IMG/VR virus record: IMGVR_UViG_3300035661_000001
Coordinates: 124,001-188,000 of that record
Reading direction: 5' to 3' (one strand)
Length of the DNA stretch: 64,000 bases
In this document: one piece after another, positions 1 to 33,766 of the stretch
Numbering within the stretch: the first letter of the stretch is position 1
How the letters are laid out: each line of letters starts with the position of its first letter
Program-made: the position numbers and the translations under genes
Notes under the pieces: model-generated
Databases searched by the model: none
What the model was told of the DNA's origin: nothing
What the model saw: the letters and a program-made list of their open reading frames with translations, nothing else

Positions 1-89
1 TCAACGTTTGCTAGAGAAGCTCAAAATTCTTTGTCTCCATTATTTAATAGTACTGCAAGATTTAATGTTACAGTAAGATAATAAATTAA

Positions 90-164
90 CGAGTAAAAGG
101 TCAGCTGGTTGCAGCCGGAGTTCTTATAAAGCTCTTGAGGTGGGTTCGATCCCCATTTACTCGA
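90..164 (+). tRNA. tRNA-Ile (anticodon TAT)
   Basis: Acceptor cgagtaa/ttactcg; anticodon arm gagtt-CT TAT AA-agctc; T arm gtggg-ttcgatc-cccat; no encoded CCA. Confidence 0.85.
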
Positions 165-181
165 CTGAAAGAAATTTAAAC

Positions 182-604
182 ATGTATGAATGGCGTAATA
201 CAGATCCACGAATAGATATCAACAAAAGAGCTGATATCATTATCATAAGACCTGATTATGAAGTTAGTAAATCACACGTAGAGACTAAACATGTTTATTG
301 TATCTTTACAAATTTTTCCGATATACGATGTATAGGTGAAGGAAAAGATTGGGATACTGAATGGAAATGGATATGGGGTCCACATTTTGGAAAATATGAT
401 TGGGATGAATGGAAAAATTCTGATCCTAGATTCGATGTAAAAGATAATAAAAATATTGTTATTGTTGCCCCTTGGTTTGGGGCAGGTAGTGGTATAGTAG
501 ATAATGAAAACGGTTGGAGCATAACATCGCCTTTTGAAGGACATGAAGTTGTAACTGTGGATGATGAATGGTGCCAAGATTGGTGGTGGATTTATGGACC
601 ATAA
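182..604 (+). CDS. Trp-rich hypothetical protein with two tandem copies of one domain
   Basis: ORF 140..604; ATG at 182 avoids tRNA overlap; EWRNTDPR..WIWGP and EWKNSDPR..WIYGP repeats. Confidence 0.7.
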   Translation: MYEWRNTDPRIDINKRADIIIIRPDYEVSKSHVETKHVYCIFTNFSDIRCIGEGKDWDTEWKWIWGPHFGKYDWDEWKNSDPRFDVKDNKNIVIVAPWFGAGSGIVDNENGWSITSPFEGHEVVTVDDEWCQDWWWIYGP

Positions 605-618
605 AATATAAGTATAAT

Positions 619-693
619 GGCTTCTTAGCTGAGATAGATTAGCGTATCCCTAAAGAGGATGAGAGGTTGGCGCAATACCAACAGGAGCCACCA
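619..693 (+). tRNA. tRNA-Phe (anticodon AAA), non-canonical T loop
   Basis: Acceptor ggcttct/aggagcc + ACCA; D stem gctg/tagc; anticodon arm tatcc-CT AAA GA-ggatg; T arm gttgg-cgcaata-ccaac. Confidence 0.8.
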
Positions 694-756
694 AAGATTA
701 ACATTCCGAACTACGCGAGGTAGGGGCGTAGCTGTTAAAAATATCCTAGGAAAAAT

Positions 757-832
757 GGCACTGTCGTATTTGTGGTCAAGACTCGGGTCTGAAAAGCCCA
801 GAAAAGCGGATCGTTACCGCTCGGTGCCACCA
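757..832 (+). tRNA. tRNA-Phe (GAA)
   Basis: Acceptor ggcactg/cggtgcc + ACCA; anticodon loop CT GAA AA; T arm agcgg-atcgtta-ccgct. Confidence 0.8.
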
Positions 833-844
833 AAACAAATTAAA

Positions 845-885
845 GAGGTGGGCTAACATAAGCAGCCATCCTATAATGAGTTGCG
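845..885 (+). ncRNA. 23S rRNA helix 43/44 (L11-binding GTPase centre)-like element
   Basis: gaggtgggc-taacat-aagcagccatcctataatgagttgcg versus conserved bacterial 23S GAGGUUGGCUUAGAAGCAGCCAUCCUUUAAAGA; intergenic, just after tRNA-Phe. Confidence 0.55.
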
Positions 886-942
886 AAAAGAATAAAGATA
901 GATTAAGAAGGCGTTAATATGAAATTTATAAGGAAAAGTTAA

Positions 943-1275
943 ATGTCATGGTGGTATGAACATCCAGAAGATTTGCAAAAATTATTGCAACCTAGTAGAG
1001 ATTTAGATAAGCAATTGATTAAACCTTTTGTAAATGAAAAGGGATATCTTGAACATTTAGATAAAAATGGTAAGATGATTAATGGATTACCAAAAAACAT
1101 TAGAATTAAATGTGGAGATTTAATGCAAGAAAGATTTCGCATCATAGATGAATATAATGGTACTCATCCAGGCAGTATATGCATAAAGTGTGGCGAAATC
1201 ATTTTAGCCAGTCAAAATGGTAAGTGTATGAATATTGCTGATTGCCCAGACGCACCGCCATTTATTGGAGGTTAA
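943..1275 (+). CDS. hypothetical protein
   Basis: 110 aa ORF with RBS-like aaggaaa upstream. Confidence 0.7.
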   Translation: MSWWYEHPEDLQKLLQPSRDLDKQLIKPFVNEKGYLEHLDKNGKMINGLPKNIRIKCGDLMQERFRIIDEYNGTHPGSICIKCGEIILASQNGKCMNIADCPDAPPFIGG

Positions 1276-1554
1276 AAATTTTTTATGAAAAGACATAAAG
1301 TTAAAGAACATTCTGGTAAAAACAGAATATTCTATATTCACGCGTATTAATGTACATAGTCCGCTCCCATCCGTCGAAGACATATTCGTAGTAGAGGGTC
1401 CTCAGTCCAAAGAAGATTTTGAAGATTTCAGATTTGACGATTGGGATAAACAAATAATTCAATACGGTAATGAATCAGAAGATGATGTTTTACTCGCAAT
1501 GACCAAACATGAAACCGAAAGACTATATTTTATGTTAGGGAAAGCATTAGGAAA

Positions 1555-1881
1555 ATGATTTTCTTTTCTTTTGAAAGAGATAAAATTTTAGAAAAACTAG
1601 TATTACCGGAACACATGATTGTATATCAGTACAACGATATGTTTTTGTATTGTACGGCTTGTGCCGAAGGGAAATTTATTACTTCTTATAACAATGAGTT
1701 TTACGAAAAAACTCATCAAGATCTTGCCAAAGATAATGTAAAATATGATAGTCCAATTTATGATGCTGCGTTAGAAGAAATAGCTAATCATTATTTGAAT
1801 TTATTAAACCCATTTATTACTTATCATAGCAAATGCATTGCCTCAGAAGAAAATAGGCAATGGAATTTACATTGCTTGTAA
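1555..1881 (+). CDS. hypothetical protein
   Basis: 108 aa ORF in co-oriented array. Confidence 0.65.
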   Translation: MIFFSFERDKILEKLVLPEHMIVYQYNDMFLYCTACAEGKFITSYNNEFYEKTHQDLAKDNVKYDSPIYDAALEEIANHYLNLLNPFITYHSKCIASEENRQWNLHCL

Positions 1882-1912
1882 ATTAATAATTTTTATTCGG
1901 TGAAAAATAATT

Positions 1913-2665
1913 ATGGATTTATTGACTCTTTTGAAATTAGATTTATCAGTTCGTGCTGATAATAATCTTTGGGGTAGTGGTTTGGGAGGTAATCCTTCTG
2001 AATTATTTTACCTTCTTAACAAGAATACTACTTTGTTTGTAGATGCTGGTGTCGCCACGACTTTTCAAGAAGATGATGAAAATTTCTCTATTATTTGTGG
2101 AGAAGAAGTTAAACTAATTCCTTTAAGAAAAAGTTTAACCCAATTTATCGGGTATCTTGAAGAAATATCTTTTGGAGAGTTAGTCCACAATATTAAGAAT
2201 AACATTGATGTGAATAACAATTCGCAAGATATCTTGGATTTAAGAGACTGTATGCTTTTGTCAGATAAATTATCTGATTGTTTGTATAGTAAAGAAGAGA
2301 AAAGAACCGCTATTCGAGATGCTTATCATAATGATGTTAAATCATTGATGGAAAGATACAGCAAATATATTGAGTATAACGATCATATGTTTAATCGCCT
2401 TGAAGGCGGGTTAGCTAGAAAATTGGATAAAGATCCCATCTGGGGTGCGCAGAAATCTTTTCTAAAAGAGAAGTCTAGAAAATTAATTGTTGAATTGTTA
2501 ACCGCTGATGAAATTCAGCTCATGGAAGAAATTAATAAATTTTCTCCACACATTACTTTTTTGTGTGCTCGGTTATTGATTGGAGTTGAGTGGTTAATGG
2601 ATTATCCTATAGATAAATATATAAACAATTTTGTTATCCCTTCAGATGGATTTAAGGTGAAATGA
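1913..2665 (+). CDS. hypothetical protein
   Basis: 250 aa ORF. Confidence 0.75.
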   Translation: MDLLTLLKLDLSVRADNNLWGSGLGGNPSELFYLLNKNTTLFVDAGVATTFQEDDENFSIICGEEVKLIPLRKSLTQFIGYLEEISFGELVHNIKNNIDVNNNSQDILDLRDCMLLSDKLSDCLYSKEEKRTAIRDAYHNDVKSLMERYSKYIEYNDHMFNRLEGGLARKLDKDPIWGAQKSFLKEKSRKLIVELLTADEIQLMEEINKFSPHITFLCARLLIGVEWLMDYPIDKYINNFVIPSDGFKVK

Positions 2666-2666
2666 T

Positions 2667-3083
2667 ATGTCAGAAGAAGAAAAGTTTTTAGATGACATTG
2701 GTTTAATTCCAGGCGCAGGTTTGGAAGCCTGGGGAAAAGCCTTAGAAGAAAAACTTGGTTTATCAATTTTTGATACACAAAAATCTATTGGTGATTGGTT
2801 AGCCGTCAATGCAGAAAAGGTTTCTCAGGAATTTATTAACATTGTTCCTAATGGAGATTATGATTTATTAATTGATGATCACGACGCAATTATTGAATAT
2901 TTGCGCACAGAAGCTTCAAAACCAGAAAATTGGGTTTTCTTGGAAGCTAGAGTTCGTGATAATTTTTTGGGTCTCGTGTTTGATTGTAAAGTTGTAGATG
3001 AAGGCGATACCTTTAAAGGTTTTGTTTTCATTGCTAAGAATGGTAAAATCAAACATGCTTTTGCTCAAAATCAAGATTTTTAA
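2667..3083 (+). CDS. hypothetical protein
   Basis: 138 aa acidic ORF, aaggtg RBS. Confidence 0.75.
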   Translation: MSEEEKFLDDIGLIPGAGLEAWGKALEEKLGLSIFDTQKSIGDWLAVNAEKVSQEFINIVPNGDYDLLIDDHDAIIEYLRTEASKPENWVFLEARVRDNFLGLVFDCKVVDEGDTFKGFVFIAKNGKIKHAFAQNQDF

Positions 3084-3120
3084 ATTAAGCTTTAGATAAG
3101 GTCAAAGCGGGTAAAATTAT

Positions 3121-3334
3121 ATGAAAAAAATAGCATTTATTTTATGTTTATTAATGTGCGCCTGTGATAAACAAACGATAGATAAACATAATGGAAATGA
3201 GTTGAGAGCTTTATCTTATTATAAAGATTCAAAAACTAAATTATGTTTTGCAGCCGCACATCTAGGATCTCAATGGGCGTGTTGACAAATGTTCCGTGTA
3301 CGCCTGAAGTAGAAAAAATCGCCGTTATTTATTA
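3121..3334 (+). CDS. small putative lipoprotein, apparently frameshifted near 3278
   Basis: MKKIAFILCLLMCAC signal/lipobox-like start; the continuation LTNVPCTPEVEK is in another frame. Confidence 0.45.
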
Positions 3335-3535
3335 GGAAAATATAAAAATGAAAAAAAATGATAATGCTTGTCGGTCTGTTGTGTATGATTGGCTGTACCA
3401 CCGCTACTAAAAATGATAAAATCATTTGTGCTATGGAAGATCCAGATCATCCAGGAGTATTAGTTGAAGTAGATTGTGACACTGGAGAACCTATTAAAAG
3501 TACTCCAAAAACCATTTCTGTAGAAATTAAGTAAT

Positions 3536-3742
3536 ATGAATGATGAAATTTGGAATGAAATTTATCAAGACTTGTATGATGAATGGTCTTCTGATGAAAT
3601 GACAGCGCCGTTCGACATTCATGAAATATCAAAAAAATATGATGTGAATGTCGATGATTTATTTAAAGAATTGAAAGAGCTATTTGATAAAGGTAATATT
3701 ATTTGGAAAAATACTATGAATACCAAATTTATATTCATTTAA
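3536..3742 (+). CDS. small acidic hypothetical protein (possible winged helix)
   Basis: 68 aa ORF. Confidence 0.55.
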   Translation: MNDEIWNEIYQDLYDEWSSDEMTAPFDIHEISKKYDVNVDDLFKELKELFDKGNIIWKNTMNTKFIFI

Positions 3743-4332
3743 GTGTTACCCCAATGTTCAATAGCATGACAATTGGCGCAAAGTATTTCTAAATTACTTT
3801 CGTCATCATTCATTCTATTCCTGTCTTTATGATGAACAATTATCGCTGCCGGATGTTCATCATAAAGACAACGTTCACAAGCTTTAGGTTTATTGGAAAA
3901 AGCAATGCGCCTATAATGTGAATGATCATCAGCTTTTGCGGTTCCAAAATGTGGGGGCATTATTTCTTTAATGCCACCAATACATTGTGCTGCATCTTTA
4001 TGAGCACGACAACAAAAGTATAACTTGCTTTTTGATAAGGCTTTTTTGGATGTAGTTTTATAAAATTTTGTGTGACAGAAAGCACATTCAACATTTGGTT
4101 CTGGTTTTGGTTCTAATGCTCTAGCATATAAACTTGCACAGCTTTGTGTACAAAATTTTCCATAACCTCTATTAATATCTTGTGAACGGGCATTAAATTC
4201 TTTTTGACATTTTAAACAATTTTGTTTTATGATTGGCATGTTGACCCCTTGTAATTTGCGCAAGTACCGTATGTTACACATAATAAGATATGCATAGATT
4301 GATATATAGTTTAATAGACACGGGGGTGTCAT
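3739..4332 (-). CDS. HNH endonuclease with N-terminal Zn fingers
   Basis: CERC..HHKDRNRMNDD..NLEILCANCHAIEH; repeated CxxC/FCxxxC; true start probably downstream (MPIIKQ). Confidence 0.85.
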   Translation of the reverse strand: MTPPCLLNYISIYAYLIMCNIRYLRKLQGVNMPIIKQNCLKCQKEFNARSQDINRGYGKFCTQSCASLYARALEPKPEPNVECAFCHTKFYKTTSKKALSKSKLYFCCRAHKDAAQCIGGIKEIMPPHFGTAKADDHSHYRRIAFSNKPKACERCLYDEHPAAIIVHHKDRNRMNDDESNLEILCANCHAIEHWGNT

Positions 4333-9704: not shown

Positions 9705-10229
9705 ATGGCTAAACTTGAGATAGAAAGAAAGTTTTTGGTTAATTTCCCATCCTCTTGGTCAGACTTAGCGGAGATGTTTGATGGATTGATTGATGTTAAA
9801 AGAATCACTCAAACATATTTGAAACCAGATGGAAAAGAACCATCTGCTAGAGTTAGAAAAACAGTTGAAGGATTAACAGGGGATACGGAAACTGTTTATC
9901 ATTTCAACCAAAAGAAATTGGTTGAATCTGGTGTTAACGAAGAAACCGAATATAAAATATCAGAAAGCAAATATAACAAACTGTTAAAAACTATTCATCC
10001 TGATAAAGTAACTCTTGAAAAAACAAGATTTGTATTTGATTATGAAGACCAGGTGTTTGAACTAGATGTTTTTAAAGGTGCTCTTAAAGGATTAGTAATT
10101 CTAGAAATAGAATTAAAAGATAAAAATCAGAAAGTGAACCTTCCTCCTTTCTTAAAAATTATTGAAGAAGTTACTAAGGATGATAGATTTAACAATTTTG
10201 AATTGGCTTCTACGCATAATCATGTATGA
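9705..10229 (+). CDS. CYTH domain protein (triphosphate tunnel metalloenzyme)
   Basis: EIERKFLV, ITQTYL, KTRFVF, FELDVF, LEIEL motifs. Confidence 0.9.
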   Translation: MAKLEIERKFLVNFPSSWSDLAEMFDGLIDVKRITQTYLKPDGKEPSARVRKTVEGLTGDTETVYHFNQKKLVESGVNEETEYKISESKYNKLLKTIHPDKVTLEKTRFVFDYEDQVFELDVFKGALKGLVILEIELKDKNQKVNLPPFLKIIEEVTKDDRFNNFELASTHNHV

Positions 10230-11068
10230 TTCTCGGAGCATACATGAAATATTTATACAAGATAACTAATTTATTAAATAACAAAGTTTATATTGGTCAA
10301 TCATATTCTGAAACAGAAAGATGGCGTCAGCATAAATATTGTGCGCGGTCAAAACCAAAACAATATATTGACCGAACTATGAAAAAATATGGTATATCAA
10401 ATTTCATTTATGAAGTGATAGCAATTGCTTTATCGCAAGAAGATACCGATTTTACTGAAATTGAATTGATAAAACAGTTTAATAGTCAAGATAGAAATTT
10501 TGGATACAATATAAGTCCTGGCGGAGATAAAATTTGGAATGAAGGATTGCCCAAAGAAAAACACCCGATGTTTGGTAGGCATCATTCCGAAGAATCTAAA
10601 AAGAAAATTTCTGAAGCTAATTCAGGTAAGTTAGTCGGACCCTGTACTGAGGAAAGAAAAAGAAAAATTTCTGAAGCAAATAAAGGAAAAACTTTTTCTT
10701 CAATACATAAGAAGAAACTAAGTGATGCAAAATTAGGAAAATCTCGTGAAAAAATGTCCGAAGAAGTCAGGCAAAAAATTGCAAAAGCAAATACTGGTAA
10801 AACGCAATCAGAAGAATTAAGAAAAAAACAATCAGAACAACGAATGGGGTTCCTTGTTTCAGATGAGGTTAAAAGAAAAATATCTCTTGCTCTAAAGGGC
10901 GAAAACGGTCCGAATTCTAAGCTATCAAACATTCAATGTTTAGAGATTATAGAAAAGAAAAAGAATGGTATTTCAGCCGTGAATTTAGCTATCGAATATA
11001 AAGTATCAAAAAAGACAATTCATAATATTGTCAAAAAAGGTATAAATTATTATGAGTCTAGAAACTGA
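10226..11068 (+). CDS. GIY-YIG homing endonuclease with NUMOD3 repeats
   Basis: YLYKITN..KVYIGQS..RW..H; GYN; HSEESKKKISEA repeats; C-terminal HTH. Confidence 0.9.
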   Translation: MILGAYMKYLYKITNLLNNKVYIGQSYSETERWRQHKYCARSKPKQYIDRTMKKYGISNFIYEVIAIALSQEDTDFTEIELIKQFNSQDRNFGYNISPGGDKIWNEGLPKEKHPMFGRHHSEESKKKISEANSGKLVGPCTEERKRKISEANKGKTFSSIHKKKLSDAKLGKSREKMSEEVRQKIAKANTGKTQSEELRKKQSEQRMGFLVSDEVKRKISLALKGENGPNSKLSNIQCLEIIEKKKNGISAVNLAIEYKVSKKTIHNIVKKGINYYESRN

Positions 11069-11254: not shown

Positions 11255-11764
11255 ATGCGTGAGTGGTTGATATATAATTTGATATGGAAAAATATCAAAG
11301 ACAATCAAATTGTGTGTGTGTGTAGTGTTTGTTTAATAGAAATTTATAGAAGACCATTTCAAATTGCAAAAGGTCCTGTATACTGCTCTCATGAGTGTAA
11401 AGGTAAATCACAGCAAAAATTACACAAATGTACTATGTGTGATAATCAAATAAAAGCGGGTTTACATAAAAAAACTTGTAGTAGGGCTTGTGCAAATAAA
11501 CAAAAAATTGGTTTAAGTTATGGTCAGCTCGGAAGACCAATAAAAGATAAAGTAAAAAGTTTAAATGAACTTAGAAAAAGAGTCGTTGATTTACGAGGGT
11601 ATAAGTGCGAAAGATGTAATTATTCAAAATTCCAAATTTTGGAGTTGCATCATAAAATAGAGAAATCAAAAGGTGGCTCCGATGATATAGATAATTTGGA
11701 ATTAATATGTCCTAATTGTCATGCAGAAGAGCATTGTTTAAGAAGATTAAGGAATGGTGTGTGA
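11255..11764 (+). CDS. HNH endonuclease with Zn fingers; natural start probably ATG 11284, shifted by a (TG)n run
   Basis: CERC..ELHH..KSKGGSDDIDNLELICPNCHAEEH; 3' end overlaps tRNA-Ser. Confidence 0.8.
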   Translation: MREWLIYNLIWKNIKDNQIVCVCSVCLIEIYRRPFQIAKGPVYCSHECKGKSQQKLHKCTMCDNQIKAGLHKKTCSRACANKQKIGLSYGQLGRPIKDKVKSLNELRKRVVDLRGYKCERCNYSKFQILELHHKIEKSKGGSDDIDNLELICPNCHAEEHCLRRLRNGV

Positions 11765-11842
11765 GCTTGGCTGAAACAACAACCCTGGAAAGGTTGTGGC
11801 GTCGTAAGGCGCCCGAGGGTTCGAATCCCTCTCATTCCTCCA
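11751..11842 (+). tRNA. tRNA-Ser (GGA)
   Basis: caacc-CT GGA AA-ggttg; long variable arm ggcgtc..ggcgcc; T loop ttcgaat; CCA. Confidence 0.9.
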
Positions 11843-18186: not shown

Positions 18187-18551
18187 ATATTATAGTTTTA
18201 AAACAAGAATTAGGATACCAAGTTTCTTGGGATAAAAATAGTGATACTGTTTTTACTTCTCATAATAATAAGATTATTCCTCAAAAATGGGAACATTGTT
18301 CATGTATTAAAAATTTAGAATGTGGCACTATACCTGATAAATATATAATTCATCAGTATCTTGACGAAGATGAAGAAATAAATTGGGACTGCCCTATAGA
18401 ATTAAAATTACACAATGCTTCTAAAATAGATGAAATTTCTTTAATAGAAGCATTGTGTTTTACTTGTAATTACAAAAACATTACTTTATTGAATGAGTTA
18501 CGTCATGGTCATTCTAAATTAAAAGAATTATTATATAAATTCAAAACTTGA
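18183..18551 (+). CDS. hypothetical protein
   Basis: 122 aa ORF, start overlaps upstream stop. Confidence 0.6.
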   Translation: MNIIVLKQELGYQVSWDKNSDTVFTSHNNKIIPQKWEHCSCIKNLECGTIPDKYIIHQYLDEDEEINWDCPIELKLHNASKIDEISLIEALCFTCNYKNITLLNELRHGHSKLKELLYKFKT

Positions 18552-19479
18552 AAATACCAGTGATATGACCCCATGTTTCACCTGTAATAATTTTTTTGAT
18601 TGCTCCGCGGCTCACATTAAATTTGGTAGCTAATTCTGTTTGATTCAAACTACTAGATTGATATAAAGAAACTATTTCAAGAACATTATCATTTGTCAAT
18701 TTAACTTGTGAATGATTTTCTCCCTTTGCTGTTATGGTTCTTTTCTTATATTTTTTATCTTTGTTTAAAGAATTGCCCACGGCAAAACAACCAGAATTAA
18801 TAATATGCGTTCCTTTATTATAAGGAATCATTCCTGGTTTAAAAGATGTCTGATTAGATTTACATAATCCTTTAGAACCTTTATTCCAACCAAGATATTT
18901 TTTACCTTCTTTGGATTTTTTAATATTGTAAATCCTTTCAGAAGTATGATTGATTCCAGTTAATTTTTTGGAAATTTTCTGATTAATATCATTTTTTTTC
19001 TCATCGGTCCAGGCAGATTTAGTTTCTTTAATTTTTGAAATTGTTTCAGATTTTTCTTCTGAAGTTTTTTTAGAATGAGCTTCGGATATAGAGTTAGAAA
19101 CCCTTTCTTTAAAAGAAGGATCTGCCCAATGGTTTCTCATGGCTTGTTTGAAATCTTCCGATTTAGGAGCGACTGAGCCTCCAAGAGAAACATTATAACC
19201 TTTCATATTAGAAATATGAGATTGTTCTTGATCAATGATTAATTCTTCTGATTCGTTTGCCGCTTGTTGATCCAAGCAAGAGGCAATTATTTCAAATAAA
19301 AAATTAACAGCGTCATGTTTTTTCATAGCACTGTTAATTTTCATTGATGGAAATTCTTTTTCAGATTCTCTTTTATGCTGAGACCATCTTTTATTTGGAT
19401 ATTGAGTTTGACCAATATAAATTTTTTGATTGATTAAATTTGTGATTTTGTATATGTAGTGCATTTTGCCTCCACACAT
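18541..19479 (-). CDS. GIY-YIG homing endonuclease (NUMOD repeats, HTH)
   Basis: YIYKITN..IYIGQT..RW.QH; GYN; C-terminal KLT..V..I..LA.KFNVS HTH. Confidence 0.9.
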   Translation of the reverse strand: MCGGKMHYIYKITNLINQKIYIGQTQYPNKRWSQHKRESEKEFPSMKINSAMKKHDAVNFLFEIIASCLDQQAANESEELIIDQEQSHISNMKGYNVSLGGSVAPKSEDFKQAMRNHWADPSFKERVSNSISEAHSKKTSEEKSETISKIKETKSAWTDEKKNDINQKISKKLTGINHTSERIYNIKKSKEGKKYLGWNKGSKGLCKSNQTSFKPGMIPYNKGTHIINSGCFAVGNSLNKDKKYKKRTITAKGENHSQVKLTNDNVLEIVSLYQSSSLNQTELATKFNVSRGAIKKIITGETWGHITGIFKF

Positions 19480-20494: not shown

Positions 20495-20743
20495 ATGAAC
20501 ATATTATTTCCATCAAATCTTGGGTCTCCCAAAGAAGTAAGTAGCTTTTGGCAAAAAGAAGCTGATGCGGCGAAGACTGTAGGTTTTGAAATAAGTATTT
20601 TAAGTGAATCACATTTTGGATCGCCAATATCAATTTTTAATAAGAGCTCGTCTTATCTATATAGAGGCTGGATTATGAAGCCTTCTGATTATGCAGAAGT
20701 AGATGAACTAGTAACCATTGAATTGTACAATTCAATGGTATAA
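20495..20743 (+). pseudogene. N-terminal fragment of a probable ATP-grasp family protein
   Basis: ILFPS....E..AA...G..YRGW.M...DY resembles ATP-grasp N-termini; runs into a palindrome and tRNA remnant. Confidence 0.5.
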
Positions 20744-20794
20744 TGCGACTTTTACAAGGTCGATTCGATGGTTCGATTCCATCAAGCCCTACCA
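20730..20794 (+). pseudogene. tRNA-Val (TAC) lacking 5' acceptor strand
   Basis: cgact-TT TAC AA-ggtcg; gatgg-ttcgatt-ccatc; aagccct ACCA; no complementary agggctt upstream. Confidence 0.75.
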
Positions 20795-20834: not shown

Positions 20835-22223
20835 ATGAGAAAGTATTTTACCACTACACTTCCGTATATTAATTCAGATCCTCATTTGGGTTTTGCCCTT
20901 GAAATAATTCAAACTGATATTCTTGCACGACATTTTCGTTTGAATGGTAATGAAGTATTTTTTAATACTGGCACTGATGAACATGGCGCCAAAATCTGGG
21001 AAAAATCACAAGGAGATCCAAAAGCTTTTTGCGATCTTGCAAGTCAGAAATTTCGAGATTTGATTCCAGTTTGTGATATTTCTGAATGTAATTTTATTAG
21101 AACGACAGATCCACATCATATACATGCCGTTCAAGAATTTTGGAAAAAATGTCAACACGATATTTACAAGAGCGAATACAAAATCAAGTACTGTACTGGC
21201 TGTGAATTAGAAAAACAAGATTCTGATTTGAAAGACGGTAAATGTATTTATCACCCAAATCGTGATATTGAAGAGCGACAAGAAGAGAATTATTATTTCA
21301 AACTCAGTAAATATACTGAGCCATTGATTAAACATTTTGAATCCAATCCTAATTTTGTAGTCCCACAACATCGACATACAGAAGCTTTAAATTTTCTGAA
21401 AACTGGATTAAAAGACATATCAATTTCCAGATTGGCTAAGAAATTACCATGGGGAATTCCAGTACCAGGCGATCCTGAACATGTTATTTATGTTTGGTTC
21501 GATGCGTTGGTTAATTATATTTCCGCTTTAGGTTGGCCAGAAAAAGATATTAATGATTCATGGCCAGGAATTCAATTTGCTGGAAAAGATAACTTGCGGC
21601 AACAAAGTATCATTTGGTCTGGCATGTTATTGTCTGCCGGGCTTCCACCTCCGAAACAAATATTTATTCATGGATTTTTAACGCAAGGCGGAGAAAAAAT
21701 TTCAAAATCTGCCGGAAATTCATTAACACCCCAGTTGTTTGAAAAATTCCCTAAAGAATATTTAAGATACTGGGTAGCTAAAGAATGTTCTCAATATGAA
21801 GATACAGAAGTAAATCCTAATAGTTTAATTCAAAACTATAATGTTAATTTAGCAAAAGGTCTTGGTAATCTTTTTAGCCGAGTATTAAAACTAGCAACGA
21901 CGCATGATATTCATATAGAATATCAATACGAGTATAATTCTTTACATTTGGATAATTTTGATATTCGTGGTGGGATTAATAATATTTGGAATAAAATTTC
22001 AGAGTTGAATTCGTATATCGAACAAACTTCGCCATTTAGATTAATCAAATCTGAAAACACTAAAGGTCAAGCCATAAATGATATTCAACATTTATTACGA
22101 GAACTATATTGGATTGCGGTACAGATAGAACCTTATCTGCCAAATACTTCTTATTCAATGAAAAAACATTTACAATGTTATGAATCAGTTCAATTATTTC
22201 CCACTATAAATGAGACCGTATGA
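20835..22223 (+). CDS. metG: methionyl-tRNA synthetase
   Basis: TTTLPYIN..PHLG (HIGH), TGTDEHG.KI, FIRTT, YVWFDAL.NY, GKD, KISKS (KMSKS). Confidence 0.95.
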   Translation: MRKYFTTTLPYINSDPHLGFALEIIQTDILARHFRLNGNEVFFNTGTDEHGAKIWEKSQGDPKAFCDLASQKFRDLIPVCDISECNFIRTTDPHHIHAVQEFWKKCQHDIYKSEYKIKYCTGCELEKQDSDLKDGKCIYHPNRDIEERQEENYYFKLSKYTEPLIKHFESNPNFVVPQHRHTEALNFLKTGLKDISISRLAKKLPWGIPVPGDPEHVIYVWFDALVNYISALGWPEKDINDSWPGIQFAGKDNLRQQSIIWSGMLLSAGLPPPKQIFIHGFLTQGGEKISKSAGNSLTPQLFEKFPKEYLRYWVAKECSQYEDTEVNPNSLIQNYNVNLAKGLGNLFSRVLKLATTHDIHIEYQYEYNSLHLDNFDIRGGINNIWNKISELNSYIEQTSPFRLIKSENTKGQAINDIQHLLRELYWIAVQIEPYLPNTSYSMKKHLQCYESVQLFPTINETV

Positions 22224-22865: not shown

Positions 22866-22937
22866 GCGGCTTTAATTCAGTAGTAGAATGCGACTTTGCC
22901 AAAGTCGATGTGGAGGGAGCATAACCCTCAAGCCGCT
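22866..22937 (+). tRNA. tRNA-Gly (GCC), non-canonical T loop
   Basis: gcggctt/aagccgc; cgact-TT GCC AA-agtcg; T arm gaggg-agcataa-ccctc. Confidence 0.8.
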
Positions 22938-24482: not shown

Positions 24483-25475
24483 ATGAGTAAGTCAGATTTA
24501 TTAAGAGAGTTAAGATCCTTAACTCAAGCCGGTATGAAAGATTGTGTTAAAGCATTAGAAGAATCAAATTTTGATATTAATAAAGCTGTTGACATTATCA
24601 AAACCAAAGGACAGAATATTGTTTCTGGTAGAGAAGGTAAAGTTGCAGCTGAAGGTTTAGTATTAATTGGTAAAACAGGATTTTTGAAAAATAAAACCGC
24701 TTTATTAATGTTAGAAGTAAATTGTGAAACAGATTTCACAGCTAAGAGTCCAGAATTCAGAATGTTTGCAAAAGATGTTTGGAATAACATCGCAGCTTGT
24801 TATCTTGGCAATGTGCCTTTTTCTGAAGGTACAAATAGTGAAGCACTATTTGCACAAACAGGCATTTCTACGAAAACTAAAGAAAAATGTATTTTTAATC
24901 GTTGGTGGATCGAAGAGCCCATCGACGATGCTTGTCGGGCGTTTGGATATGTACATCATCCCACAGATAAATTAGCTTCAATAATTACATTGAAAGCTCC
25001 TTCTGTAGAACTTGCAGATTCAGAAGAATTTTCCAAAATTGGTCACGATCTTGCTATGCAAATAGTAGCGCTGAATCCAATAGCTGTATCTCCTGAATCT
25101 TTATCAGAAGATGTTGTTGTTCGGCAAAAAGATATATTTGAAGCTCAAATGAAAGAGCTTGGTAAACCTCAATCACAGTGGGCTAGAATTATTGAAGGTA
25201 AACTTAATAAGTGGTATACCGAAGTTTGTTTAATAAAACAAGAATCAGTAGTATTTCCTAAGAAAAGTATCGAGCAGCTTATTGAGACTCAGTATGCGGC
25301 TCTGTTAGGTGGCAAGATTGAAATTGTTAATTTCATTCGTTGTCAAGTAGGTGAAGGTTTAGTAAAACCTAAGGGCGATTCTTTTGCTTTAGAAGTTGCA
25401 AAATTATCAAATGTACCGGCAGCGGCGTGCCCTACTGCCGAAAAAGGAGTATGTGACCATACTCATACTAAATAA
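24483..25475 (+). CDS. tsf: translation elongation factor Ts
   Basis: LRELR..T.AGM.DC.KAL; AAEGLV; EVNCETDF; LAMQIVA.NP; F.R..VGEG. Confidence 0.95.
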   Translation: MSKSDLLRELRSLTQAGMKDCVKALEESNFDINKAVDIIKTKGQNIVSGREGKVAAEGLVLIGKTGFLKNKTALLMLEVNCETDFTAKSPEFRMFAKDVWNNIAACYLGNVPFSEGTNSEALFAQTGISTKTKEKCIFNRWWIEEPIDDACRAFGYVHHPTDKLASIITLKAPSVELADSEEFSKIGHDLAMQIVALNPIAVSPESLSEDVVVRQKDIFEAQMKELGKPQSQWARIIEGKLNKWYTEVCLIKQESVVFPKKSIEQLIETQYAALLGGKIEIVNFIRCQVGEGLVKPKGDSFALEVAKLSNVPAAACPTAEKGVCDHTHTK

Positions 25476-28530: not shown

Positions 28531-28578
28531 AATTTAAGATTGAAAGGAGGGCAAGATAGTAATCTTGCCTTTTATTTT

Positions 28579-29184
28579 ATGAAACAGTATCCATCAATAA
28601 CGAAAAATATTAGAAAAGATTTATACATTTACGCATTTGATAAGCTTGATGGCAGTAATATCAGAGCCGGATGGAATTCAAAAAAAGGTTTTTACAAGTT
28701 TGGATCTCGAACTGAATTAATTGATAAGTCGAGTCCATTCGGCGGGGCAATATCTTTAATTCAAGATAAGTATAGCCAAGATTTGTCAAGAGTTTTTAAA
28801 GACTTAAAATGGTCTGAAGCCGTTTGTTTTTTTGAATATTTTGGTCCTAGTTCTTTTGCAGGTTCTCATAATTTTAAAGAGGACATGGATACTGTTTTGA
28901 TTGACATTTCACCTTTTAAAATAGGTATTCTGCCTCCAGCTCGTTTCATTGAATATTTTGGACATTTGAATACTGCAAAAGTACTTTATGAAGGCGATAT
29001 TACTTCAGACCTATTTGATACTGTAAAACAATCGACTATGCAAGGAATGACATCAGAAGGCGTAGTTTGCAAAGGGATGGATGATAAACATTTGATTATG
29101 TTTAAAATCAAATCAAACGCTTGGCTAGATAAACTTAAAATTCATTGTAATGGAAATGATTTTCTTTACCAAAAATTAGAGTAA
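28579..29184 (+). CDS. RNA ligase (Rnl2-like nucleotidyltransferase)
   Basis: DKLDGSN (motif I), FFEYFG, EGVV, FKIK; likely start MKQYPSI. Confidence 0.75.
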   Translation: MKQYPSITKNIRKDLYIYAFDKLDGSNIRAGWNSKKGFYKFGSRTELIDKSSPFGGAISLIQDKYSQDLSRVFKDLKWSEAVCFFEYFGPSSFAGSHNFKEDMDTVLIDISPFKIGILPPARFIEYFGHLNTAKVLYEGDITSDLFDTVKQSTMQGMTSEGVVCKGMDDKHLIMFKIKSNAWLDKLKIHCNGNDFLYQKLE

Positions 29185-29900: not shown

Positions 29901-30817
29901 ATGTCACAAGAAAAATACACGCTCGAAATTATTAGTCACAGCCCTAATTTCAAAAATAAAACATTGAAAAAATATGCAGTGGACGGTATTGATACTATCG
30001 GAGCTTGGGCGATGAACCATTTGAATTGAAATTTAAAAATAATACTTTTTCTAAAGTTCAAGTCAGACTATCGATAGATGGCACTGATATTTTAACAGCC
30101 TTGCCTGCTACTACCGGAACTGCTGGTTCTATGTGGGTAGTTAATGGTCATGATACTTTGTCATTAAAAGCTTGGCCAGAAAATAGTAAGAGTGGTGCTA
30201 GTTTTGTTTTTACCAGTGCTCAAAATAGCGTTGCGCTACATACTCATGGAGATTTAAGCAGCCGTGGAATTATTGCAGCCGCTGTTTTTGAAGAAGGTTA
30301 TGTAGAGCCAATTAGATTTGTAAAATACGTTGATATTTCTGATTCTGGTAGAGTTGGATCAGATTCTGATCTCAGAAGCTATGACTATAGCTGTTCCGAT
30401 TCAATCACTTCAATTCACGAATCATTGAGCTTTAATGATTGTGGTCCTGTTGCAGCTGCTGGTCCAGCTAGCGCTGAACCTACAAAATCATCAGGTGAAT
30501 TTTCATCAAGAAGACGCGCTAAAGAATTACAGAGTTTAGTTGCAGTTGGCGCAGGCAAACAGGTTGAACAAGAAATAACTTATGTTAAAGGATTGAAACA
30601 ACCTATATTGGCTGAAACTGTTAAAGTACGTTATCTTTGGTGGGATGAATTAAAAGCTAAGTTGAAGGATCAAAAACCAGAAGACATCCACCCATCAGGT
30701 TTTCCGGGCGACAAGGCTCATAAGATAATAAGCTTAGGGGCTACGCCAAGAATTGGAAATCAATCTAAAAAATTGAGACGCGACGGAAAAGTATCACAAG
30801 AATTTTCGAGATTTTAA
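29901..30817 (+). CDS. hypothetical protein (1-nt frameshift near 30008)
   Basis: aggag RBS then ATG 29901 MSQEKYTLEII..IGAW, continuing GDEPFE in another frame. Confidence 0.65.
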
Positions 30818-30853
30818 TCTTCCCATCAGCGAAGACACATGCAGTTGAATAAC

Positions 30854-30885
30854 AAAATGAGCAACCCAGGTTGCTCATTTTTTTT
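30854..30885 (+). terminator. intrinsic terminator
   Basis: aaaatgagcaacc-ca-ggttgctcatttt plus T run. Confidence 0.75.
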
Positions 30886-30899
30886 ATATAGGACAAATT

Positions 30900-32279
30900 A
30901 TGAGAATTAATTATCTATTTGACACTGATAGTTACAAAGTTTCACATTATTTACAGTACCCACCTGGTACTACTAGCATGTTTAGTTATATCGAATCCCG
31001 GGGTGGTGATTATGATTACACGGTGTTTGCTGGGCTCCAGTACATCTTAAAAGAATACTTGACGTATCGTGTCACGGCTGAGGATGTAAACCGAGCTAAT
31101 GCTCTTTATACGTTACATGGCGAGCCTTTTAATTACGAAGGCTGGATGTATATTGTAAACAATTTGAATGGTAAATTGCCATTGAGAATTCGTGCAGTCC
31201 CAGAAGGAACTGTAGTTCCGGGTCATAACATTTTAGTCAGCATTGAATCGACGGATCCAAAAGTGTTTTGGGTAGCATCATGGATGGAGACTATGCTCTT
31301 GAGAGTTTGGTATCCAATTACGGTCGCGACCAGAAGTCATAAAATCAAAAGTATAATTCATAAAGCTCTCGAAAAATCATCTGATGATCCCGATGTTGAA
31401 ATTATGTTTAAACTTCATGATTTTGGATCAAGAGGTGTATCAAGTCAGGAATCAGCTATGTTAGGCGGATTATCTCATTTGATTAATTTCCGAGGCAGTG
31501 ATACTATTGCCGGTATTATTTGCGGCATTGATTACTATCATTGTGATATGGCTGGGTTTAGTATTCCAGCAGCCGAACATAGTTCAATTACCTCTTGGGG
31601 TAAAGAAAACGAAGTTGAAGCTTATCGAAATATGATTAAGCAATTTGCTAAGCCAGGAGCATTGGTAGCAGTTGTTTCTGATTCATATGATTTGTATAAT
31701 GCTTGTGAAAAACTTTGGGGAGATTTGCTTAAGCAAGAAGTTATTGATTCTGGAGCAATTGTGGTAATTAGACCGGATTCTGGTCATCCACCAACAGTTG
31801 TTTTGAAAACTGCTGAAATTCTGGCATCCAAGTTTGGGCATACAGTCAATTCAAAAGGCTACAAAGTTATCAACAACGTTCGTATTATCCAGGGTGACGG
31901 AGTGAATGAGCATTCGATTAAAGAGATTTTAGACAATCTTATGGGTGCCGGATTCAGTGCCACCAATGTTGGTTTCGGCATGGGCGGTCAGCTTCTACAG
32001 GGATTGAATAGAGATACCTTGAAATTCGCTATGAAATGCTCAGACGTTATCGTGAATGGCAATCACCGAGATGTATTTAAGGATCCCGTCACAGATCATG
32101 GCAAAAAGTCCAAGGCTGGCAGATTGGATCTAGTACGGATTAAGGATGGTTCTTACAAGACTATTAAGTTGCCACCAGGCGCTGTTTCTTGGGGCAATTC
32201 TGTCATGAGAACGATATACGAAAACGGAGAGATTTTGGTCGATGATTCTCTAGACACTATCAGAAGTAGAGTTACATGA
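30900..32279 (+). CDS. nadV: nicotinamide phosphoribosyltransferase (NAMPT)
   Basis: TDSYKVSH, LHDFGSRG, SIPAAEHS, VSDSYD, IRPDSG, IQGDG, GFGMGG, KDPVTD.GKKSK.GR. Confidence 0.95.
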   Translation: MRINYLFDTDSYKVSHYLQYPPGTTSMFSYIESRGGDYDYTVFAGLQYILKEYLTYRVTAEDVNRANALYTLHGEPFNYEGWMYIVNNLNGKLPLRIRAVPEGTVVPGHNILVSIESTDPKVFWVASWMETMLLRVWYPITVATRSHKIKSIIHKALEKSSDDPDVEIMFKLHDFGSRGVSSQESAMLGGLSHLINFRGSDTIAGIICGIDYYHCDMAGFSIPAAEHSSITSWGKENEVEAYRNMIKQFAKPGALVAVVSDSYDLYNACEKLWGDLLKQEVIDSGAIVVIRPDSGHPPTVVLKTAEILASKFGHTVNSKGYKVINNVRIIQGDGVNEHSIKEILDNLMGAGFSATNVGFGMGGQLLQGLNRDTLKFAMKCSDVIVNGNHRDVFKDPVTDHGKKSKAGRLDLVRIKDGSYKTIKLPPGAVSWGNSVMRTIYENGEILVDDSLDTIRSRVT

Positions 32280-32294
32280 TATATGCGTTAAGTT

Positions 32295-32443
32295 TCAAGC
32301 ACCCAATTCCAGCCCTAATTGATGCTGTAAAAATTGACAGCGCCATCACCCATCAGTCGAATGATGCTGAAGCGGGAGCATTAGCAATTGCTTTGGCGAC
32401 AGCTTATATTACCAATCATGATACTGACAATTTGAAAAATTAA
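32295..32443 (+). pseudogene. internal fragment of a second ADP-ribosylglycohydrolase
   Basis: LIDAVKIDSAITHQSNDAEAGALAIALAT aligns with LIDFAQTDASITHNSPEPKAGSMAIALGT of 11982..12893. Confidence 0.65.
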
Positions 32444-32478
32444 GATCTGGGAGTGCAGATGAGTATGCTGTTTTTATA

Positions 32479-32790
32479 TTGTATGATACTCGTAGTAACG
32501 ATAAAAAACGCAAACTAGATAATAATCTTACATTGGATTTCATTAAAACAACTTTATCGGTAGGTAAGTGTTCTTATTGTGAAGAATCAAAATACAAACT
32601 TACACTTGATCGTATAGATAATAATAAAGGTCATACTACTGATAATGTAATTGTTAGTTGTAATAATTGCAATATCATTAGAGGAAATATACCATACGAT
32701 GCTTGGATGTGTATTGTTCCCGGTGTTAAGAAAGCGCGCGAGTTAGGTTTATTAAATAATTGGTCGGCTTATAACAGGAGATTTGGATAA
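32479..32790 (+). pseudogene. C-terminal part of HNH-type endonuclease
   Basis: CSYC..LTLDRIDNNKGH..DNV..SCNNCN; no convincing start. Confidence 0.65.
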
Positions 32791-32792
32791 CT

Positions 32793-33755
32793 ATGGGATG
32801 CTGGTCAGGAACATGCGGGATTACTCAACTTCCAATCAAAGCTGGCGATAAGATTCGTGCTTTTATCCTAGTAGATAATACTTACAAAGGTGAAGTGCGG
32901 GGCGGCGGAAATTATTATCCGCATGATGAATGGATGCCACTTGGTATTTCTGTTCAAGGCACTTATGATGATTATGGCGGAATGGAAAATATCGTCGAGA
33001 ATGAAACAACTCATCTTATGCTTGACCTTCTTAAAGAAGGTTGGTCAATAGATGGTGAGGATAAATCAAGATATAACATTCCAGATACTAGCAAGCTTAA
33101 ATTGGCTGATGTTTTGAATGGCGTCGAAAGAGACGCAGCGAAATATAGCACTCTTTGTCGAAAAAATAGAACGCTTGGTATTATGTATGTTTTGGAAGAA
33201 GTATATCAGTCTATAATGGAGTTTGATCCAATTGGTGTACATTATACTAAACCAGAATACCAATATAAACCAGAAAAAAGTATCTTCGTAGAAGAACTCA
33301 AAAAGTGGTATGAACAATCTTTGTCAAATTTTGCGAGTTTACTATCTGGAGATGACAAAACAAAATTCTTATTCAGAATGGCAACGGCTGATATTTTCTC
33401 CGCTCATCATAGAGATAACGAATTATTTCATATCTTGAGAACCAAGTTCGTTGAGTTAATTGAAGCTGGAGTTCCATTTGATGATGCTAGGGTCCAGACG
33501 TGGTGTAATCCATTATGGGAAATGTCTCATTTTCAAATCACAATGATGCGTGCTAGAAAGTTCTGGCACCCCCAAAGTGGCAAAGGCAGTCAAAATCAGG
33601 ACCTCGATATTCATAAAAAATTGCAAGAGGCAGTGTCCTGTGTTATTATGAGGCGAGAGTTGGAATCCGAAGAGGATGGTCGCGCCGCGCCTGATGAAAA
33701 TGGATACTATCCATACATGTTAGAACAAAACGCCAAAGTACATAGCAAAATGTAA
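32793..33755 (+). CDS. hypothetical protein
   Basis: 320 aa ORF (MGCWSGTCGITQLPI; G.YDDYG). Confidence 0.75.
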   Translation: MGCWSGTCGITQLPIKAGDKIRAFILVDNTYKGEVRGGGNYYPHDEWMPLGISVQGTYDDYGGMENIVENETTHLMLDLLKEGWSIDGEDKSRYNIPDTSKLKLADVLNGVERDAAKYSTLCRKNRTLGIMYVLEEVYQSIMEFDPIGVHYTKPEYQYKPEKSIFVEELKKWYEQSLSNFASLLSGDDKTKFLFRMATADIFSAHHRDNELFHILRTKFVELIEAGVPFDDARVQTWCNPLWEMSHFQITMMRARKFWHPQSGKGSQNQDLDIHKKLQEAVSCVIMRRELESEEDGRAAPDENGYYPYMLEQNAKVHSKM

Positions 33756-33766
33756 ATTCGAGTATT

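What the first reader, a model, noticed from the sequence alone, without database searches (positions are those of the whole stretch)
619..693. tRNA-Phe with AAA anticodon beside a normal Phe(GAA)
The cloverleaf is complete with encoded CCA, but the anticodon is AAA. Established: bacteria normally use only Phe(GAA), and A34 tRNAs are essentially limited to TadA substrates such as Arg(ACG). It could serve the abundant UUU codons of this AT-rich phage, escape anticodon nucleases, or superwobble into Leu UUA/UUG (inference).
Basis: partly seen in the sequence, partly recalled or inferred. Interest (0 to 1): 0.6.

Follow-up and report, generated by a model that had tools for sequence, protein, structure and literature searches.

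The report
Huge-phage tRNA-Phe with mutated AAA anticodon
One of three phenylalanine tRNA genes in a 452-kb phage carries a recent single-base change that turns its anticodon from GAA to AAA; related phages all keep GAA, so it is probably a tolerated mutation in a spare gene copy and not a new decoding system.

Summary
Window 619-693 (+) folds into a perfect 75-nt cloverleaf with U33, anticodon AAA (652-654), G37, A73 and an encoded CCA. ARAGORN and Rfam both miss it. It is about 80% identical to annotated tRNA-Phe genes of T4-like, T5-like and other phages.

The window is part of a 452-kb IMG/VR phage contig. A second assembly from another sample (3 SNPs in 12.8 kb) has the same AAA, so this is not a random sequencing error.

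The syntenic gene in diverged relatives (L009, L010; neighbouring ORF 87% and 82% identical) has GAA, as do all the other distinct members of its subfamily. The AAA is therefore a derived G34A transition private to this phage population. The phage keeps a Phe(GAA) gene 64 nt downstream and another about 5 kb upstream.

G34 is a major PheRS identity element. The most likely reading is a near-neutral variant of a redundant gene: poorly charged, and reading UUU (with some UUC) as Phe when it is charged. A specialised Watson-Crick UUU decoder is not excluded (about 0.2).

The more unusual result is a by-product. This phage tRNA-Phe family switches between G18/U55 and A18/G55 with no mixed states among 78 distinct sequences, and many A18/G55 members are invisible to standard tRNA finders.

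The parts
619..693 (+). tRNA-Phe-type gene with anticodon AAA. Acceptor 619-625/683-689, D arm 628-643, anticodon arm 645-661, T arm 666-682, A73 at 690, CCA at 691-693.
   Evidence: Sequence. The MFE fold is the cloverleaf. About 80% identical to annotated phage tRNA-Phe genes. Cloverleaf covariation in the orthologue alignment. Missed by ARAGORN and Rfam.
652..654 (+). Anticodon AAA. Position 652 is nucleotide 34, where all relatives have G.
   Evidence: Alignments A1 and A3. Family table: G34 in 76 and A34 in 2 of 78 distinct sequences. Identical in two assemblies.
636..636 (+). A18 in the D-loop (AGATAGAT), in place of the near-universal G18.
   Evidence: A18 always occurs together with G55.
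672..672 (+). G55 in the T-loop (CGCAATA), in place of the near-universal U55. It covaries with A18.
   Evidence: 49 G18/U55, 29 A18/G55 and 0 mixed; at least 4 coupled switches on supported branches.
757..832 (+). Neighbouring tRNA-Phe(GAA), T-loop ATCGTTA, encoded CCA. This is the redundant copy that keeps the standard anticodon.
   Evidence: ARAGORN. Rfam 28.1 bits against a gathering score of 29. Conserved in L010 and L011.
90..165 (+). tRNA-Ile(TAT), the upstream member of the same conserved tRNA/ORF block.
   Evidence: ARAGORN. Rfam 36.5 bits. Same position in L009 and L010.
182..604 (+). 140-aa Trp-rich ORF of unknown function immediately upstream. Used as the synteny anchor to find orthologous tRNAs.
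   Evidence: Homologues at 87%, 82% and 76% identity. Their contigs carry the orthologous tRNA directly downstream.
20835..22223 (+). Methionyl-tRNA synthetase-like gene. Context: the phage encodes translation components.
   Evidence: Pfam tRNA-synt_1g, E = 7.4e-80.
24483..25475 (+). Elongation factor Ts-like gene (context).
   Evidence: Pfam EF_TS, E = 1.6e-37.

Best explanation
Window 619-693 is a genuine, structurally intact member of a widespread phage tRNA-Phe family, in its A18/G55 elbow subfamily. In this one huge-phage population it has acquired a single G-to-A transition at wobble position 34, changing GAA to AAA. The change is recent and private to the lineage, and it sits in one of three Phe tRNA genes.

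The most likely consequence (inferred) is near-neutral. The transcript still folds and is processed as a tRNA. It is a poor substrate for PheRS because G34 is a principal Phe identity element. Whatever fraction is charged reads UUU by Watson-Crick pairing, and UUC weakly, still as Phe. Nothing is recoded, and the two GAA copies carry normal Phe decoding.

A34 is also the least harmful anticodon mutation available to a tRNA-Phe. U34 or C34 would redirect it to Leu codons. This would explain why A is the only non-G base seen at position 34 in the family.
For: Shown by tools:
- Homology to annotated phage tRNA-Phe genes at about 80% identity.
- Perfect cloverleaf with strong compensatory covariation among orthologues.
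- Identical AAA in two assemblies from different samples that differ by 3 SNPs over 12.8 kb.
- The syntenic gene directly after the same ORF has GAA in L009 (ORF 87% identical) and L010 (82%).
- All the other distinct A18/G55 sequences, and 76 of 78 distinct family sequences, have GAA; none has C or U at position 34.
- Exhaustive AAA-pattern scans found only this phage in 2.9 million viral contigs, nothing genuine in the JGI metagenomes, and one unrelated case in 185,579 species genomes.
- The two AAA cases are separate tips on the family tree.
- Redundancy: Phe(GAA) at 757-832 and at L005 6271-6346.
- No change accompanies G34A elsewhere in the anticodon loop; C32, U33, G37 and A38 are the same as in L010.

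From the literature:
- G34, A35, A36 and A73 are the conserved Phe identity set, and G34 is the strongest determinant in T. thermophilus (PMC9976931).
- G34A in human mt-tRNA-Phe is pathogenic (PMC7540514).
- An engineered yeast tRNA-Phe(AAA) in E. coli occupies about 50% of UUU codons and about 6% of UUC codons (PMC4814082).
Against: Nothing here measures expression, charging or decoding. The variant has survived in two sampled populations, although these are almost identical. The gene shows no other sign of decay: all 21 pairs are intact, and CCA and A73 are kept. UUU is 78% of Phe codons, so a Watson-Crick UUU reader could in principle be useful. The phage encodes its own MetRS and EF-Ts, so a phage PheRS with relaxed anticodon recognition elsewhere in the 452-kb genome cannot be excluded; only about 78 kb of it could be read here. 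A34 anticodons in other two-codon boxes (Ser ACU, Tyr AUA, Cys ACA) recur at low frequency in phage tRNA arrays. This could be mutational noise or an unrecognised phage habit.
Confidence: 0.55

Rival explanations
1. Adaptive UUU specialist. The AAA tRNA is expressed, adequately charged with Phe by the host PheRS or a phage-encoded one, and selected because it reads the dominant UUU codon by a Watson-Crick A-U pair in place of the G-U wobble. This would speed translation of the AT-rich phage genes.
For: UUU 572 against UUC 161 in window ORFs. The gene is fully intact and keeps A73 and CCA. The phage invests in translation genes such as MetRS and EF-Ts. An engineered tRNA-Phe(AAA) competes well at UUU on E. 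coli ribosomes (PMC4814082). An independent Phe(AAA) of the same family exists in a Lachnospiraceae tRNA array.
Against: Related phages keep GAA at the orthologous gene. Both AAA cases are isolated tips with no diversified clade behind them. G34 is a key PheRS determinant (PMC9976931). No PheRS was found in the readable part of the genome.
Confidence: 0.2
2. Counter-defence variant. The wobble change makes this copy resistant to a host anticodon nuclease or modifier that recognises the GAA loop, or makes it a decoy for such an enzyme. This would keep some Phe decoding alive during infection.
For: Phage tRNAs are proposed to evade host tRNases through anticodon-loop changes (PMC10264068). Three differently deviant Phe tRNA genes in one phage, with G33, A34 and unusual elbows, suggest diversification.
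Against: The published escape changes flank the anticodon and do not alter it (PMC10264068). No nuclease that targets tRNA-Phe is implicated here. Relatives lack the change. The change costs a PheRS identity element.
Confidence: 0.07
3. Code-bending tRNA. A34 is deaminated to inosine, or reads promiscuously (superwobble), so that Phe is inserted at Leu UUA/UUG codons.
For: Unmodified A34 can read more than U in some systems (references cited in PMC4814082). UUA is the commonest Leu codon in the window (662).
Against: I34 is tolerated only in 3- and 4-codon boxes (PMC8879553). The loop has A35-A36, not the C35-G36 of the bacterial TadA substrate. No deaminase domain was found among 87 window ORFs scanned. 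Proteome-wide Leu-to-Phe errors would be costly. Relatives have GAA.
Confidence: 0.03
4. Dead gene. The AAA copy is an untranscribed or unprocessed pseudogene on its way to decay.
For: It is redundant with two GAA genes. It is not recognised by ARAGORN or Rfam. No promoter-like site lies directly upstream.
Against: All stems, A73 and CCA are intact. GAA orthologues with the same core are equally missed by both detectors, so non-detection says nothing about decay. It lies in a co-oriented tRNA/ORF block that is probably co-transcribed.
Confidence: 0.1
5. Sequencing or assembly artefact at position 652.
For: It is a single-base difference from the family consensus.
Against: Identical in two assemblies from different samples that differ elsewhere by 3 SNPs. 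The change is a substitution, not a homopolymer length error.
Confidence: 0.03

Closest known systems
tRNA-Phe genes of T4-like, T5-like, Acinetobacter and Xanthomonas phages (e.g. Enterobacter phage PG7, Escherichia phage SpoonbillGilly, Xanthomonas phage X1)
   Same: About 77-81% identity. Same D arm (GCTGAGATNGATTAGC), same AGAG variable region, same GTTGG/CCAAC T stem, A73 and encoded CCA.
   Different: Those genes have G18, U55 and anticodon GAA. The window copy has A18, G55 and AAA.
Orthologous tRNA-Phe(GAA) of related huge phages (L009, L010, L017/L018)
   Same: In L009 and L010, the same position directly after the same ORF. In all of them, the same acceptor stem or one compensated pair different, the same A18/G55 elbow, and in L010 the same CGCAATA T-loop.
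   Different: They have GAA, differently compensated anticodon stems, and A15/U48 where the window copy has G15/G48.
Engineered yeast tRNA-Phe(AAA) used to split the UUU and UUC codons in E. coli (Tirrell laboratory; PMC4814082, PMC13631461)
   Same: A Phe-type tRNA body with anticodon AAA. It shows how such a tRNA decodes: UUU well, UUC weakly.
   Different: It is man-made, overexpressed and paired with an engineered yeast PheRS. The window tRNA is natural and its synthetase is unknown.
Human mitochondrial tRNA-Phe G34A (MERRF-associated; PMC7540514)
   Same: The same substitution at the same position of a tRNA-Phe, removing the G34 contact with PheRS.
   Different: It is a pathogenic variant of the sole Phe tRNA of the organelle. 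Here there are two GAA back-up genes.
Natural bacterial A34 tRNAs (Arg ACG deaminated by TadA; occasional unmodified A34 in four-codon boxes; PMC8879553)
   Same: An encoded adenosine at the wobble position.
   Different: Those lie in 3- or 4-codon boxes, where broad reading is harmless. Phe is a two-codon box, and the loop lacks the C35-G36 of the TadA substrate.

Membership tests
tRNA (canonical cloverleaf, Rfam RF00005) | 7-bp acceptor stem, D arm, 5-bp anticodon stem with a 7-nt loop (U33, purine 37), and 5-bp T stem with a 7-nt loop | tested here: met
   Sequence and MFE fold. 100% of 252 pair cells are paired, with 14 of 21 pairs compensatory, across 12 orthologues.
tRNA (canonical cloverleaf, Rfam RF00005) | Conserved elbow nucleotides G18-G19 and T54-Psi55-C56 | tested here: not met
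   The D-loop is AGATAGAT (A18, G19) and the T-loop is CGCAATA (C54, G55, C56). The A18/G55 combination is conserved and covaries in 29 distinct relatives.
tRNA (canonical cloverleaf, Rfam RF00005) | Score at or above the family gathering threshold (29 bits) | tested here: not met
   Not reported at E <= 10 on 1500-, 251- or 89-nt slices, nor at E <= 1 in the identical L007 copy. Orthologues L009, L010, L017 and L020 score 44.7-52 bits. GAA members L012, L014, L015, L016 and L022 are missed too.
Phage-type tRNA-Phe family | Family-specific body: D arm GCTGAGATNGATTAGC, 4-nt variable region, and sequence similarity to annotated members | tested here: met
   blastn identity of 77-81% to annotated tRNA-Phe genes in GenBank phages; 213 records matched the 4-kb query and every listed hit maps to this stretch. 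Alignments A1 and A3.
Phage-type tRNA-Phe family | Phe identity set: G34, A35, A36, A73 (PMC9976931) | tested here: not met
   A35, A36 and A73 are present. Position 34 is A, not G.
Phage-type tRNA-Phe family | Orthology by synteny with GAA-bearing genes in related phages | tested here: met
   Directly downstream of the same ORF in L009 and L010.
Phage-type tRNA-Phe family | Aminoacylation with phenylalanine | not testable with these tools
   Requires charging assays or tRNA-seq.
TadA (A34-to-I34) substrate | A34 in an Arg(ACG)-like loop with C35 and G36, within a 3- or 4-codon box | tested here: not met
   The loop is CUAAAGA (A35, A36). Phe is a two-codon box (PMC8879553).

The most novel reading that the evidence does not exclude
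A natural, functional tRNA-Phe(AAA). On this reading the huge phage deliberately keeps a Watson-Crick UUU decoder alongside its GAA copies, perhaps charged by a phage-encoded or anticodon-tolerant PheRS. The sparse A34 anticodons in other two-codon boxes of phage tRNA arrays (Ser ACU, Tyr AUA, Cys ACA) would then be the same strategy, an exception to the near-universal avoidance of A34 in split codon boxes.
Probability: 0.2. Interest if true: 0.75.

Novelty: new variant of a known kind. Interest (0 to 1): 0.42.

Why it matters
If the AAA tRNA is charged and used, it would be a natural counter-example to the rule that A34 is excluded from two-codon boxes. It would also be a ready-made, evolved part for splitting the UUU and UUC codons in genetic-code engineering.

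Even if it is only a tolerated mutation, following it up exposed two things of practical value. First, a large phage tRNA-Phe family replaces the 'invariant' G18-U55 elbow contact with A18-G55, in a strictly coupled way. Second, many of these genes are missed by ARAGORN and Rfam, so phage tRNA inventories under-count tRNA-Phe. Both points bear on how tRNA elbows are recognised by RNase P, the CCA-adding enzyme, TruB/TrmA, the ribosome and tRNA-targeting defences.

Tried and rejected
- Two viral-contig scans were wasted on a pattern that was one base out of register. After that, patterns were validated locally first.
- Megablast of a 10-kb piece of the window (30000-40000) against GenBank phages found nothing. 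No sequenced isolate is close.
- The narrow AAA pattern found nothing in the JGI metagenomes or GTDB genomes.
- The broader AAA pattern gave two false positives inside a coding sequence (L024, L025).
- I tried to test whether AAA persists in the Lachnospiraceae lineage (L026) through homologues of its neighbouring YkuK-type gene. The related arrays lack a Phe gene or are cut off, so persistence there is untested.
- The simple promoter and terminator scan around the tRNA pair was no better than shuffled sequence.
- No PheRS, deaminase or other tRNA-modifying enzyme was found in the window.
- A full-text search for 'A18' with 'G55' in tRNA T-loops found no paper. This is absence from that library, not proof of novelty.
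- The family tree rests on 72 columns and is poorly resolved. Only the counts forced by well-supported branches are used.

Full report
**1. The observation.** Window 619-693 (+) reads as a 75-nt cloverleaf. Its parts are as follows:

| Part | Sequence or coordinates |
|---|---|
| Acceptor stem | GGCTTCT with AGGAGCC, 7 pairs, one G-U |
| D stem | GCTG with TAGC |
| D-loop | AGATAGAT |
| Anticodon stem | TATCC with GGATG |
| Anticodon loop | CTAAAGA (anticodon AAA at 652-654) |
| Variable region | AGAG |
| T stem | GTTGG with CCAAC |
| T-loop | CGCAATA |
| Discriminator | A690 |
| 3' end | CCA at 691-693 |

The minimum-free-energy structure is exactly this cloverleaf (-22.9 kcal/mol, z = -2.5).

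ARAGORN tRNAs in the window, including Phe(GAA) at 757-832 and Ile(TAT) at 90-165, but it does not call this one. The Rfam tRNA model does not report it either, even on an 89-nt slice at E <= 10, nor in the identical copy in L007.

**2. What it is related to.** In a blastn search of window 1-4000 against GenBank phages, the only part that matched was this stretch. Every listed hit maps to it at 77-81% identity, and most fall on genes annotated as tRNA-Phe in T4-like, T5-like, Acinetobacter and Xanthomonas phages. The alignment shows a shared body: D arm GCTGAGATGGATTAGC, loop CTGAAGA, variable region AGAG and T stem GTTGG/CCAAC. The window copy differs at three functionally loaded positions: G18 to A, G34 to A and U55 to G.

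**3. The genome.**
- The window is identical to positions of about 124,001-188,000 of IMGVR_UViG_3300035661_000001, a 452-kb viral contig.
- A 349-kb contig from another sample (3300035182) differs by 3 SNPs in 12.8 kb and has the same tRNA sequence. A random base-calling error is therefore very unlikely. The two are effectively one population, though, so this says nothing about long-term retention.
- GC content is about 0.32.
- The window encodes MetRS, EF-Ts, an RNA-ligase-like protein, an RNase T-like exonuclease, NAMPT, an NAD-dependent ligase and many homing endonucleases.
- The window holds no PheRS or deaminase domain, but it is only about 14% of the genome.
- A third Phe(GAA) gene lies about 5 kb upstream of the window. 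It has G33 and a TTAAAAT T-loop.

**4. Orthologues.** The 140-aa ORF just upstream of the tRNA (182-604) has homologues at 87%, 82% and 76% identity on other contigs.
- In L009 (a 240-kb JGI contig) and L010 (a Logan contig), the orthologous tRNA sits directly after that ORF.
- Both keep the same acceptor stem and the A18/G55 elbow. L010 even has the same CGCAATA T-loop. Their anticodon stems are different but fully compensated.
- Both have anticodon GAA.
- L011 lacks this copy and keeps only the 757-type Phe(GAA).

A D-arm pattern scan of IMG/VR returned 12 further contigs with A18. All of them have G55 and GAA. On a 12-sequence alignment, the cloverleaf is paired in 100% of 252 cells, 14 of 21 pairs show changes on both sides, and no shuffle or slide control approaches this. 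The lineage is therefore a real, structurally constrained tRNA, and AAA is a derived state private to the window phage.

**5. How rare is AAA?**
- AAA-specific pattern scans were exhaustive for exact pattern matches. They found only this phage among the viral contigs, nothing genuine in the JGI metagenome collection, and one case among the species-representative genomes.
- That one case is a 14-tRNA array in Lachnospiraceae bacterium AD3010, flanked by a PBECR4 phage-type nuclease gene. Its family member is of the G18/U55 type and ARAGORN calls it Phe(aaa).
- Among 78 distinct intact family sequences, position 34 is G in 76, A in 2, and never C or U.
- The two AAA cases are far apart on the family tree, so they are independent tip events.
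- I could not establish whether AAA persists in relatives of the Lachnospiraceae array.

**6. Mechanism.** Established knowledge bears on this in four ways.
- G34, A35, A36 and A73 are the conserved Phe identity set, and G34 is the strongest determinant in T. thermophilus PheRS (PMC9976931).
- The same G34A change in human mt-tRNA-Phe is pathogenic (PMC7540514).
- I34 is compatible only with 3- or 4-codon boxes, and in bacteria it is mostly confined to Arg(ACG) (PMC8879553).
- An engineered tRNA-Phe(AAA) works on E. coli ribosomes, taking about 50% of UUU and about 6% of UUC codons (PMC4814082; see also PMC13631461).

Combined with the comparative data, my best reading (inference, confidence about 0.55) is as follows. 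This is a recent transition in a redundant gene. It yields a correctly folded but poorly charged tRNA, and any charged fraction still inserts Phe at Phe codons, so it is nearly neutral. A is also the only anticodon change that does not redirect the tRNA to Leu codons, which fits the absence of C34 and U34 from the family.

The rivals are an adaptive Watson-Crick UUU decoder (0.2), a dead gene (0.1), nuclease escape or a decoy (0.07), inosine or superwobble reading into Leu codons (0.03) and an artefact (0.03). UUU makes up 78% of Phe codons (572 against 161). That keeps the adaptive reading alive, but related phages keep GAA.

**7. Why the detectors fail.** Orthologues L009, L010, L017 and L020 score 44.7-52 bits with Rfam. 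GAA-bearing members L012, L014, L015, L016 and L022 share the window copy's A18/G55 and G15/G48 core, and both programs miss them as well. Non-detection therefore reflects the unusual tertiary-interaction nucleotides. It does not reflect the anticodon or decay.

**8. By-products.**
- Positions 18 and 55 covary perfectly in the family: 49 G18/U55, 29 A18/G55 and 0 mixed. There are 17 switches on the best tree, and at least 4 are forced by well-supported branches.
- G19 and C56 are constant across the 12-sequence subfamily alignment and in every T-loop variant tabulated.
- Positions 15 and 48 covary: G/G in 67, A/U in 7 and G/C in 4.
- Positions 54 and 58 occur as A/U in 33, U/A in 21 and C/A in 18.
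- A text search found no paper describing an A18/G55 T-loop variant.
Of these, 59 have A34: 36 are Arg(ACG), and the other 23 include Ser(ACU) four times, Tyr(AUA) three times and Cys(ACA) once. A34 in split codon boxes is therefore sparse in phage arrays but not unique to this phage.

**9. Verdict.** The functional interpretations are not supported by conservation, and they have not been disproved either. The feature is a new variant of a known kind: a phage tRNA-Phe with a private G34A change on an unusual A18/G55 body. Interest is moderate for the AAA anticodon itself and higher for the elbow covariation and the hidden tRNA-Phe genes.

Noticed in passing
window 636 and 672; loci L001-L139 (family table): In the phage tRNA-Phe family, D-loop position 18 and T-loop position 55 covary perfectly: 49 distinct sequences are G18/U55, 29 are A18/G55 and none is mixed. 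The best tree needs 17 switches, and well-supported branches force at least 4. A text search found no paper describing this variant.
   Followed up: partly
L012 4224-4298, L014 12659-12733, L015 759-833, L016 1687-1761, L022 10349-10423: tRNA-Phe(GAA) genes with intact cloverleaves and the A18/G55 + G15/G48 core are missed by both ARAGORN and Rfam. The tRNA arrays of these phages would wrongly appear to lack tRNA-Phe.
   Followed up: partly
L026 3799-3872 (Lachnospiraceae bacterium AD3010, JHWU01000021.1): An independent tRNA-Phe(AAA) of the same family (G18/U55 type, no encoded CCA) sits inside a 14-tRNA array that shows no Phe(GAA) within 8 kb. A PBECR4 phage-type nuclease gene and a YkuK-type RNase H-like gene flank the array.
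   Followed up: partly
L016 2114-2200; L036 9668-9758; L051 954-1027; L122 5305-5379; others: Other A34 anticodons in two-codon boxes occur in phage tRNA arrays: Ser(ACU) four times, Tyr(AUA) three times and Cys(ACA) once, among 1,283 distinct ARAGORN calls. A34 also occurs in four-codon boxes: Leu AAG, Thr AGU, Ser AGA, Val AAC and Pro AGG. Some calls may be misassigned.
   Followed up: no
L005 6271-6346 (about 5 kb upstream of the window start): The phage's third tRNA-Phe(GAA) has G33 in place of the universal U33, a D-loop without GG, and a TTAAAAT T-loop (A56). All three Phe tRNAs of this phage deviate at normally invariant positions.
   Followed up: no
window 633 and 665; family table: The Levitt-pair positions 15 and 48 covary in the family: G15/G48 in 67, A15/U48 in 7 and G15/C48 in 4. 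Positions 54 and 58 occur as A/U in 33, U/A in 21 and C/A in 18, so the T-loop is unusually plastic.
   Followed up: no
L011 1160-1234; L010 about 1270-1601; window 833-895: In the relatives, the Phe(GAA) gene is followed by about 350 nt of structured-looking RNA. It ends in a tRNA-like domain with a G3-U70 pair, a canonical TTCGACT T-loop and CCA, which resembles a tmRNA; the Rfam tmRNA score is only 16.9 bits. The window keeps only the first 60 nt or so and lacks the tRNA-like end.
   Followed up: partly
L017 9607-9953 (IMGVR_UViG_3300035661_003237). Its tRNA-Phe is identical to that of the 446-kb contig IMGVR_UViG_3300036715_004471: A full-length bacterial class A RNase P RNA (288 bits) lies on a tRNA-rich viral contig from the same sample as the window phage. 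It may be a phage-encoded RNase P RNA or a misbinned bacterial fragment.
   Followed up: no
window 20835-22223, 24483-25475, 28540-29184, 61002-61631: The phage encodes a MetRS-like protein, an EF-Ts-like protein, an RNA-ligase-like protein and an RNase T-like exonuclease among its scattered tRNA genes.
   Followed up: no
window 22866-22937 and 20729-20783: Rfam reports a tRNA (49.6 bits) and a partial tRNA (34.7 bits, model positions 9-63) that ARAGORN does not call. In the whole-window run Rfam in turn misses the ARAGORN calls at 90-165, 757-832 and 11751-11842. The window's tRNA inventory is therefore incomplete with either tool.
   Followed up: no
window 10226-11068, 18541-19479, 44963-45613, 54748-55548, 60373-61011, plus small HNH ORFs: Homing-endonuclease genes (GIY-YIG/NUMOD3, HNH, LAGLIDADG-like) are densely interspersed with the tRNA genes. 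In relative L009, an HNH-type ORF follows the Phe(GAA) orthologue where the window has the second Phe gene.
   Followed up: no
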